A stretch of DNA of 63,104 nucleotides, counting the filler, from Octopus bimaculoides (Eukaryota): assembly GCF_001194135.2 (NCBI RefSeq). It is 3 parts of 3 records of this genome, joined end to end, with 100 filler letters (N's around TTAATTAATTAA, not from the genome) between each part and the next. Parts side by side here need not be neighbours in the genome. Positions count along the whole stretch, not along the records: positions 1 to 27,657 come from NC_068988.1; 2 more parts are not named here. The stretch is one strand, 5' to 3'. The stretch's first letter is position 1, and every line of letters begins with the position of its first letter. The notes under the pieces were generated by a model. The model was given only the letters and a program-made list of their open reading frames with translations. It searched no databases and was not told where the DNA came from. This document shows, in pieces, positions 8,355 through 8,623 of this stretch. A program made the position numbers and the translations under genes.

Positions 8355-8359
<5 letters not shown>

Positions 8360-8408
8360 TTATTTGTTTCAGTCATTTGACTGCGGCCATGCTGGAGCAC
8401 CACCTTTA
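8355..8408 (-). mobile_element. SINE family A 3' tail fused downstream of a 5S copy
   Basis: Minus strand taaaggtggtgctccagcatggccgcagtcaaatgactgaaacaaataaaataa is nearly identical to the tail at about 59060-59110. Confidence 0.9.
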
Positions 8409-8421
8409 AAATTAACAGAAT

Positions 8422-8539
8422 GCTTACAGCACCTAGGTTTCCCAAGCATTCACCCATCTAAGTACTAACTAGGCTCGATGTTGCTTAACTTCGGTGATTG
8501 GACGAGAACCGGTGCTTTCAACGTGATATGGCTGTAAGC
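8422..8539 (-). rRNA. 5S rRNA copy, 118 nt, probably a retroposed pseudogene or SINE head
   Basis: Minus strand GCTTACAGCCATATCACGTTGAAAGCACCGGTTCTCGTCCAATCACCGAAGTTAAGCAACATCGAGCCTAGTTAGTACTTAGATGGGTGAATGCTTGGGAAACCTAGGTGCTGTAAGC. Helix I GCTTACAGC/GCTGTAAGC is perfect and CCTAG/CTAGG pair; the box C region deviates from the metazoan consensus. Confidence 0.9.
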
Positions 8540-8623
8540 ATATATATATAAGCGTATATATAGATATAGATAAAGATATACAGATATATATGTATGTGTA
8601 TACACGTATGTAAATGAATGTGT

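What the first reader, a model, noticed from the sequence alone, without database searches (positions are those of the whole stretch)
8355..8560. Full-length 5S rRNA fused to the tail of the dominant SINE: candidate 5S-headed SINE or chimeric retrogene
Seen: a 118-nt 5S starts exactly at +1 directly after (TA)n. After a 13-nt linker it continues into the family A SINE tail, which ends in (TA)n again. Known: SINE3-type elements have 5S heads and LINE-recognised tails, and template switching creates small-RNA/retroposon chimeras. Inference: this is either a member of a cephalopod 5S-derived SINE family that borrowed the family A tail, or a one-off chimera. Against: a TTTT run at the junction could terminate Pol III before the tail, and tail-only family A fragments occur elsewhere in the window, so chance adjacency is possible.
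Basis: partly seen in the sequence, partly recalled or inferred. Interest (0 to 1): 0.72.

Follow-up and report, generated by a model that had tools for sequence, protein, structure and literature searches.

The report
5S rRNA copy fused to SINE tail
An octopus genome window holds a decayed, full-length copy of 5S ribosomal RNA joined head-to-tail to the last 54 bases of the common octopus SINE, most likely a one-off by-product of reverse transcriptase jumping between two RNAs, which is a known kind of event and also the way new SINE families begin.

Summary
Reading that strand, the order is:
- (TA)5 flank
- full-length 5S, 8539-8421 (Rfam 97.3 bits, E 2.6e-20, model 1-120)
- 13-nt spacer TTCTGTTAATTTT, 8420-8408
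- last 54 nt of the abundant octopus SINE ("family A"), 8408-8355
- (TA)21

Homology to the SINE starts sharply at TAAAGG. The spacer is not SINE sequence, and it ends in the first T4 after the 5S. So 5S plus spacer looks like a complete Pol III primary transcript, from +1 to the terminator.

The retained SINE piece is the conserved two-hairpin 3' module that several octopus SINE bodies share. None of 28 other tails examined is tail-only or attached to 5S.

The 5S part is decayed: 3 of 34 pairs are broken and box C is hit. It is the only 5S in about 160 kb of octopod DNA that I could reach.

Best reading (0.55): a single chimeric retrocopy made by template switching from SINE RNA to pre-5S RNA during target-primed reverse transcription. 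The T4 between head and tail argues against it spreading as a SINE.

The decisive test, copy number of the junction genome-wide, could not be run. A 5S-headed SINE family like HaSE3 therefore remains possible (0.25).

The parts
8540..8550 (-). (TA)5 directly 5' of the 5S +1, a candidate target-site duplication. It is part of a wider imperfect TA-rich tract, 8540-8669.
   Evidence: The same TATATATATAT follows the tail at 8354 and downward. Because both flanks are TA microsatellite, a duplication cannot be told apart from the repeat.
8421..8539 (-). Full-length 5S rRNA copy (119 nt), starting at +1 and now decayed.
   Evidence: RF00001, model 1-120, 97.3 bits, E 2.6e-20; 34 pairs, 3 non-canonical (C17.A61, C34.A41, G86.A91), one G.U at a conserved G-C, and one doubly changed pair A70-U105; 5 departures in box C and 1 in the IE, against a Xenopus 5S recalled from memory.
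8408..8420 (-). 13-nt spacer TTCTGTTAATTTT, read as the 3' trailer of a pre-5S Pol III transcript. The T4 at 8411-8408 is the first T run of 4 or more after the 5S end. The last T (8408) could equally be the first base of the SINE tail, a 1-nt overlap.
   Evidence: 1/12 match to family A by my own comparison of the aligned sequences; no other tail in 29 has this upstream sequence. The role as trailer and terminator is inference from known Pol III termination at T runs of 4 or more.
8355..8408 (-). The 3'-terminal 54 nt of the family A SINE (consensus positions about 349-402), including its A-rich end.
   Evidence: 98% identity to the consensus over 50 nt; the module is 88% conserved over 29 copies.
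8385..8404 (-). Predicted tail hairpin 1 (GGUGGUGC UCCA GCAUGGCC).
   Evidence: the 54-nt tail folds at -16.2 kcal/mol with MFE frequency 0.96 and z -3.2; 94% of cells in this helix are paired across 29 copies, and covariation is uninformative.
8370..8383 (-). Predicted tail hairpin 2 (CAGUC AAAU GACUG).
   Evidence: 89% of cells paired and the pairs are almost invariant.
8312..8354 (-). (TA)21 plus T directly 3' of the SINE tail. It is either the element's simple-repeat tail, or the pre-existing microsatellite target, or both.
   Evidence: (AT array 8272-8355).

Best explanation
This is a single bipartite chimeric retrocopy. Shown: a full 5S copy, from +1 to its 3' end, followed by a 13-nt trailer that ends in T4, is fused in the same orientation to the last 54 nt of the family A SINE. 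That SINE piece is the conserved two-hairpin 3' module plus the A-rich end.

Inferred mechanism:
1. A LINE reverse transcriptase began target-primed reverse transcription on a family A SINE RNA at a nick in TA-rich DNA.
2. It copied the 3' module and then, 4 nt past the base of the first hairpin, jumped to the 3' end of an unprocessed 5S primary transcript. The transcript's terminal U could pair with the terminal A of the nascent cDNA, which would account for the 1-nt overlap.
3. It copied that RNA to its 5' end.
4. The product was integrated once and has since decayed as neutral DNA. About 9% divergence in the 5S part suggests roughly 10-30 My at the published octopus neutral rate.

It is not a gene. 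It is probably not a propagating SINE, because Pol III starting at the 5S +1 would normally terminate at the T4 before reaching the tail.
For: - Full-length 5S in sense orientation, model 1-120, beginning exactly after the flank.
- Sharp breakpoint: 49/50 identity to family A downstream of TAAAGG and 1/12 upstream (my comparison of the sequences).
- The spacer ends in the first T4 after the 5S, which is what a Pol III primary transcript would carry.
- The family A consensus has no TTTT in 394 nt, while 80% of composition-matched shuffles do. This is consistent with T4 acting as a terminator in this genome.
- The retained piece is exactly the stable, conserved two-hairpin module. That module is shared by several different SINE bodies, as expected of the part a LINE enzyme recognises.
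- 0 of 28 other tails is 5'-truncated to the tail alone or follows a 5S.
- There is no family A body upstream of the 5S, so this is not a 5S insertion into a SINE.
- The 5S has decayed: 3 broken pairs and box C hit.
- No other 5S in the window or in 135 kb of octopod loci.
- No second junction among annotated proteins.
- Precedents: small-RNA/retroelement chimeras including WEIRD-MgSINE (PMC2104539) and 5S/LINE-1 chimeras (PMC11838501).
Against: - A target-site duplication cannot be demonstrated, because both flanks are TA microsatellite.
- Uniqueness of the junction was not tested genome-wide.
- A random 27.6-kb window is an unlikely place to meet a rare one-off event, which favours something commoner.
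- An O. vulgaris repeat annotation lists four '5S' SINE families covering 9.8 Mb (PMC13282606).
- In humans, 5S/L1 chimeras are mostly antisense and truncated, unlike this one.
- The native 3' flank of octopus 5S genes is unknown to me, so the 'trailer' reading of the spacer is inference.
Confidence: 0.55

Rival explanations
1. It is a member of an amplified 5S-headed SINE family of the SINE3 type, built like HaSE3 of moths. In that case a founder chimera of this kind kept enough Pol III promoter activity and read-through of the T4 to be copied many times by the LINE that recognises the shared tail.
For: - Head plus LINE-recognised tail is the SINE plan, and the tail module is demonstrably modular between octopus SINE bodies.
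- HaSE3 is a 5S head on the body and tail of a tRNA SINE, and is explained by the same template switch (PMC3272025).
- SINE3 families have arisen several times independently (PMC10886601).
- The O. vulgaris annotation lists four '5S' SINE families covering 9.83 Mb. At that density, a copy in a 27.6-kb window would be unremarkable.
- One pair (A70-U105) is changed on both sides yet still pairs. This could be a family-diagnostic variant.
Against: - A T4 sits between head and tail, while the successful family A consensus has none in 394 nt.
- Box C, the IE and three helices are damaged.
- There is no body module.
- No second 5S in about 160 kb and no second junction peptide in the protein collection. 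Both samples are small.
- The published '5S' class looks unreliable as SINE evidence. Its 7 'recent, 90% or more full-length' insertions total 42,242 bp, about 6 kb each.
- Retroposed 5S promoters are thought to be weak without upstream signals.
Confidence: 0.25
2. There were two independent events, or a deletion. Either a 5S pseudogene and a separately inserted 5'-truncated SINE lie next to each other by chance, or a deletion removed the SINE's 5' part.
For: - Family A tails are dense, about one per 4 kb in the sequences examined.
- The locus is microsatellite-rich and prone to rearrangement.
- No target-site duplication can be shown for the composite.
Against: - 0 of 28 other tails is tail-only.
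- My estimate from those densities is below about 4e-4 per 5S pseudogene for a tail-only copy in the same orientation starting within 20 nt of the 5S end.
- The non-homologous spacer ends exactly in T4 at the junction. Chance adjacency does not predict this.
- There is no separate direct repeat around the tail alone or the 5S alone.
- No remnant of SINE body lies on either side.
Confidence: 0.1
3. The product is the same but the route differs. The pre-5S RNA and a 3' fragment of SINE RNA were ligated as RNA, as RtcB does for U6/LINE-1, and the joined RNA was then reverse-transcribed in one pass.
For: RNA ligation before retrotransposition has been shown for U6/L1 chimeras (PMC6789731, abstract). 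The junction has at most a 1-nt overlap, which fits ligation as well as switching.
Against: From my own knowledge, that route depends on the 2',3'-cyclic phosphate end of U6, and a nascent Pol III 5S transcript ends in 3'-OH. It also needs a SINE RNA cleaved exactly 4 nt before the hairpins. Nothing in the sequence distinguishes the two routes.
Confidence: 0.05
4. It is a DNA-level 5S orphon: a stray copy of a 5S gene with its native 3' flank, moved by recombination and lying next to a SINE fragment.
For: The spacer may well be the native 3' flank of a 5S gene.
Against: Similarity starts exactly at +1 with nothing recognisable upstream. There is no array and no second unit in 27.6 kb. The 5S-derived part ends exactly at the terminator. 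These are boundaries of an RNA, not of a DNA segment.
Confidence: 0.03

Closest known systems
Bipartite chimeric retrogenes made by LINE template switching: U6/L1 and 5S/L1 in mammals, WEIRD-MGL and WEIRD-MgSINE in Magnaporthe (PMC2104539, PMC11838501)
   Same: The 5' part is a complete small non-coding RNA in sense orientation, and the 3' part is a 5'-truncated retroelement that keeps its own 3' end. The two are fused directly at the 3' end of the small RNA. The WEIRD-MgSINE class has a SINE, not a LINE, as the 3' partner. Published cases in AT-rich or microsatellite targets likewise lack a callable duplication.
   Different: The host is a cephalopod and the enzyme is an unidentified non-L1 LINE. 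The 5S carries a 13-nt trailer. Human 5S/L1 chimeras are mostly antisense and truncated at loops C and D, whereas this one is sense and full-length, as U6 chimeras are. No target-site duplication has been shown.
HaSE3 of Helicoverpa armigera and other 5S-derived SINEs (SINE3 of zebrafish, 5S-headed DeuSINEs, fruit-bat and springhare families)
   Same: A 5S head is joined to the 3' part of a resident tRNA-derived SINE, and the fusion is attributed to a switch from SINE RNA to 5S rRNA (for DeuSINEs).
   Different: HaSE3 is a family with many diverged copies in several species. It keeps the body as well as the tail of HaSE1, and its best-conserved part is the A/IE/C promoter. Here only one copy is known, only 54 nt of the SINE are kept, a T4 separates head and tail, and box C is damaged.
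5S rRNA retropseudogenes
   Same: A full-length 5S copy starting at +1, dispersed away from any array, and decaying.
   Different: An ordinary retropseudogene ends in its own 3' end plus a simple tail. This one continues into a specific, conserved SINE module.

Membership tests
Bipartite chimeric retrogene (template-switch chimera) | The 5' component is a complete copy of a small cellular RNA in sense orientation. | tested here: met
   cmscan covers model 1-120 uncut at 8539-8421. The orientation is the same as the tail.
Bipartite chimeric retrogene (template-switch chimera) | The 3' component is a 5'-truncated retroelement that keeps its own 3' end. | tested here: met
   Only consensus positions about 349-402 of family A are present, through the A-rich end.
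Bipartite chimeric retrogene (template-switch chimera) | The whole composite is flanked by one target-site duplication of 10-20 bp. | tested here: inconclusive
   (TA)5 precedes the 5S and (TA)21 follows the tail. This is compatible with a duplication, but it cannot be separated from the microsatellite.
Bipartite chimeric retrogene (template-switch chimera) | The junction is unique to the locus, so each chimera is an independent, non-propagating event. | not testable with these tools
The only findings are no second junction in about 160 kb and none among annotated proteins.
SINE, 5S-derived (SINE3 type; SINEBase definition, PMC3531059) | At least 60% identity to 5S rRNA over at least 60 nt at the 5' end. 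| tested here: met
   (97.3 bits over 119 nt).
SINE, 5S-derived (SINE3 type; SINEBase definition, PMC3531059) | [quoted passage not shown] | not testable with these tools
   The unit is about 185 nt, so it is short. Only one copy was seen, and the copy number could not be measured.
SINE, 5S-derived (SINE3 type; SINEBase definition, PMC3531059) | Pol III can transcribe from the head through to the tail, with no internal terminator and an intact type 1 promoter. | tested here: not met
   TTTT lies at 8411-8408 between head and tail. Box C has 5 departures and the IE has 1, against a recalled reference. This is judged from sequence only, and read-through was not measured.
SINE, 5S-derived (SINE3 type; SINEBase definition, PMC3531059) | The tail is shared with, or recognised by, a partner LINE. 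| tested here: inconclusive
   The tail module is conserved (88%) and shared by several SINE bodies, and it folds into two hairpins. No LINE carrying it was identified.
Functional 5S rRNA gene | Intact helices and promoter, normally within a tandem array. | tested here: not met
   3 of 34 pairs are broken. It is the only 5S in 27.6 kb.

The most novel reading that the evidence does not exclude
The unit is one copy of a so-far undescribed octopus 5S-headed SINE family. It would be a molluscan SINE3, HaSE3-like in origin, made of nothing but a pre-5S transcript and the 54-nt shared tail module. It would amplify despite an internal T4, which would mean that Pol III read-through of T4 is frequent in octopus.
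Probability: 0.22. Interest if true: 0.5.

Novelty: new member of a known kind. Interest (0 to 1): 0.33.

Why it matters
If it is a one-off, it is a clean invertebrate example of the template-switch chimeras known from mammals and fungi. It has the unusual detail that the captured 5S still carries its 3' trailer and terminator, so the captured RNA would have been nascent, unprocessed pre-5S. It also shows that the enzyme mobilising the dominant octopus SINEs needs no more than the last 54 nt, the two hairpins plus the A-rich end, to start.

If it is a family, it would show how minimal a SINE can be. It would also add a 5S-derived SINE to molluscs, a group for which I found none described in the papers I read. 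Either way it is a snapshot of the step by which SINE heads and tails are recombined.

Tried and rejected
- **Sequencing reads.** There was no depth or junction-read test and no RNA read-through test.
- **Junction peptides in the protein collection.** All three frames that stay open across the junction were searched. The only hit was an O. vulgaris hypothetical protein covering an ordinary SINE tail.
- **Six-frame peptides of 5S and of the family A consensus.** The top hits (P0002-P0004, 306-384 bits) look like 5S arrays mis-called as proteins, from Tribolium and unnamed ENA contigs. The weaker hits are RT/helicase-type proteins from other arthropods. None was from octopus.
- **Scans of public DNA collections.**
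  - The metagenome scan for 5S-end...tail found nothing.
  - Its control scan for the tail alone also found nothing, so no copy of the tail, and hence no sign of octopus DNA, turned up there.
  - The viral contigs scan found nothing.
  - The prokaryote genome scan gave one chance match in Psychrobacter.
- **Sampling octopod DNA through the ARMC6/PARP16 locus.** Loci came from O. vulgaris, O. bimaculoides, O. sinensis and Argonauta: 135 kb, but largely orthologous. They held no 5S. That is too little to exclude a family at one copy per 50-100 kb.
- **No gene anchor.** No protein-coding exon was found in the window, so the orthologous locus in sister species could not be fetched.
- **Literature.** Searching papers for the SINE tail sequence gave nothing. 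The octopus genome paper and Buzdin 2003 are not held.
- **Spacer as diverged family A sequence:** rejected, 1/12 match.
- **5S inserted into a pre-existing SINE:** rejected, because there is no SINE body upstream.
- **Covariation in the tail hairpins:** uninformative, because the module hardly varies.
- **ARAGORN and Rfam on the family A head.** Neither calls it a tRNA. Its tRNA origin rests on A/B-box-like motifs that I read in the consensus.

Full report
**What is there**

The window has a single match to any Rfam family at gathering score. It is 5S rRNA on the minus strand at 8539-8421, covering model positions 1-120 without truncation, at 97.3 bits and E 2.6e-20. A permissive scan adds only sub-threshold hits that sit on microsatellites.

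Read on the minus strand, the order is:
- ...TATATATATAT
- 5S (GCTTACAGCC...GCTGTAAGCA)
- TTCTGTTAATTTT
- AAAGGTGGTGCTCCAGCATGGCCGCAGTCAAATGACTGAAACAAATAAAATAA
- (TA)21

**The SINE**

The tail motif recurs 6 times in the window, against 0 expected. It belongs to an element of about 400 nt with these parts, taken from the alignment and consensus of 10 copies:
- a head carrying A- and B-box-like motifs
- a central TA/TG microsatellite
- a body
- the conserved 3' module

A protein search placed this SINE in Octopus: an O. vulgaris hypothetical protein is partly an antisense translation of the tail. The window's frequent N gaps of irregular length match the O. bimaculoides assembly (L003) and not the O. 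vulgaris or O. sinensis loci. The window is therefore probably O. bimaculoides; this is inference.

**The breakpoint**

- Downstream of TAAAGG the unit is 49/50 identical to consensus positions 349-398.
- The 12 nt upstream match the family at 1 of 12 positions, by my own comparison of the sequences.
- In all 28 other tails from the window and four Octopus loci, the module is preceded by SINE body. At least three or four different body types share the same module.
- None of those tails is truncated to the tail alone, and none follows a 5S.
- No family A body lies upstream of the 5S, so the 5S did not insert into a SINE.

**The retained 54 nt**

The piece folds with high confidence into two adjacent hairpins followed by the A-rich end: -16.2 kcal/mol, MFE frequency 0.96, z -3.2. 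Across 29 copies the module is 88% conserved and 92% of pair cells are standard pairs. It varies too little for covariation to say anything.

A conserved 3' stem-loop module shared by several SINE bodies is what a stringent-type LINE recognises. That rests on established knowledge (Kajikawa and Okada 2002, cited). The partner LINE was not identified here.

**The spacer**

TTCTGTTAATTTT contains the first run of four or more T after the 5S 3' end, and that run ends exactly at the junction. Pol III terminates in such runs. So 5S plus spacer has the boundaries of a primary transcript, from +1 to the terminator.

From my own knowledge, Drosophila 5S is made as a precursor of about 135 nt with a 15-nt trailer, so a 13-nt trailer is not unusual. 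The last T could belong to either partner, a 1-nt overlap.

The family A consensus has no TTTT in 394 nt, although 80% of composition-matched shuffles contain one. This is weak but consistent evidence that T4 matters for Pol III here.

**State of the 5S**

- Of 34 model pairs, three are non-canonical: C17.A61, C34.A41 and G86.A91.
- One conserved G-C is now G.U.
- One pair is changed on both sides yet still pairs, A70-U105.
- Against a Xenopus 5S recalled from memory, box C carries 5 departures and the intermediate element carries 1.
- From the 6 changes at paired positions I estimate about 9% divergence from a functional ancestor.
- The tail has 1 change in 48-50 nt plus 1-2 in the A-rich end. 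That is compatible with the same age (Poisson p about 0.13-0.28).
- At the neutral rate quoted for octopus (0.0036 per My) this gives roughly 10-30 My, which overlaps the SINE/LINE expansions reported at 18-25 My. All of this is rough inference, because I could not obtain the species' functional 5S.

**Mechanism**

The features that were tested fit a template-switch chimera:
- a complete small RNA in sense orientation
- a 5'-truncated retroelement that keeps its 3' end
- direct fusion at the RNA's 3' end

Reverse transcription would have started on SINE RNA at a nick in TA-rich DNA, copied the two hairpins, jumped to the 3' end of a pre-5S RNA and run to its 5' end.

The fourth feature, a target-site duplication, is compatible but not demonstrable. 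(TA)5 precedes the unit and (TA)21 follows it, all inside a microsatellite. Published chimeras in such targets have the same problem.

Chance adjacency is unlikely. With tails at about one per 4 kb and tail-only copies at 0 of 28, I estimate under 4e-4 per 5S pseudogene. Chance also does not predict a spacer ending in T4.

**One-off or family?**

- The metagenome control scan found no copy of the octopus SINE tail.
- The viral scan found nothing, and the prokaryote scan gave only a chance match in Psychrobacter.
- The protein collection contains hardly any SINE-derived octopus ORFs.
- Through ARMC6 orthologues I fetched 135 kb from O. vulgaris, O. bimaculoides, O. sinensis and Argonauta. It holds 35 tail modules and no 5S. 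The loci are largely orthologous, so this excludes only a very dense family.

For a family:
- HaSE3 of moths has this origin.
- SINE3 families arose repeatedly.
- An O. vulgaris annotation lists four '5S' SINE families covering 9.83 Mb.
- A rare one-off is an unlikely thing to meet in a random 27.6-kb window.

Against a family:
- A T4 lies between head and tail.
- The promoter is damaged.
- There is no body module.
- The published '5S' class looks doubtful. Its seven 'recent, near full-length' copies average about 6 kb, which does not look like a SINE.

I put the one-off chimera at 0.55, the family at 0.25, chance or deletion at 0.10, an RNA-ligation route at 0.05 and a DNA-level orphon at 0.03.

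**Comparison and novelty**

The unit works like the U6/L1 and WEIRD-MgSINE chimeras, and it meets the three structural criteria that could be tested. It resembles the founder of a HaSE3-type SINE, but I do not file it as a SINE. The copy-number criterion of SINEBase (100 or more copies) is untested, and the requirement for transcription through to the tail is not met at sequence level. It is a new member of a known kind.

Interest is modest. It is a tidy invertebrate example that captures an unprocessed pre-5S RNA and shows that 54 nt of tail suffice for priming. Its value would rise if the junction proves to be repeated.

Noticed in passing
window 1078-1302 (+) and 1307-1692 (-): Two family A SINEs lie tail to tail. 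Their conserved tails (1241-1286 and 1315-1353) form an inverted repeat separated by about 30 nt of A/T-rich sequence. This could form a long hairpin or reflect insertion of one SINE at the end of the other.
   Followed up: partly
L001, L003, L004 (e.g. L001:9087-9134, L001:14860-14907, L003:10970-11017) and window tails: The same two-hairpin 3' module sits behind at least three or four different SINE bodies. The upstream contexts are ...GCTCGAC|TAAAGG, ...GACTAAAATCTCT|TTAAGG, ...TTGACTAAAGTTCT|TCGAGG and ...GTTCGACTAAACCCC|TCAAAG. So octopus SINE families share one tail module.
   Followed up: partly
L006 (Argonauta hians, 23.7 kb) versus L001 and L003-L005: The Argonauta ARMC6/PARP16 locus has no hit to the family A tail module, while the orthologous Octopus loci have 5-14 each. 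This hints that the module expanded within Octopodidae.
   Followed up: no
L001 4526-5017 (-) and 5056-5277 (+): An inverted pair of LINE 3' ORF ends (..FFTLR[IV]AEAWNKLPASVV..ASFKTSMLPEI..) lies inside the O. vulgaris PARP16 region. I did not check whether this LINE carries the SINE tail module.
   Followed up: no
window 1942-1951, 4559-5246, 14935-15414, 18395-18414, 19088-19353, 21726-21952, 22815-23234, 23975-24110: There are eight N gaps of irregular length, mostly inside TA/TG microsatellites. The same style is seen in the O. bimaculoides locus L003 and not in the O. vulgaris or O. sinensis loci. This suggests a short-read scaffold assembly, probably O. bimaculoides.
   Followed up: partly
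window, many sites (e.g. 9499-9580, 5860-5930, 24209-24320): About 120 sub-threshold Rfam 'miRNA/snoRNA' hits at E up to 1 all sit on TA/TG/AG microsatellites and are artefacts of low complexity.
   Followed up: yes
PMC13282606, Table 1 and Supplementary Table 1: The O. vulgaris repeat annotation has a 'SINE/5S' class of 4 families covering 9.83 Mb. Its 7 'recently active' copies total 42,242 bp, about 6 kb each. This looks like 5S-containing long repeats or arrays rather than SINEs, and it deserves checking against this junction.
   Followed up: partly
protein collection hits P0002-P0004: Six-frame 5S peptides retrieve annotated 'proteins' from Tribolium castaneum and unnamed ENA contigs at 300+ bits. 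I take these to be tandem 5S arrays mis-called as ORFs in public annotation.
   Followed up: no
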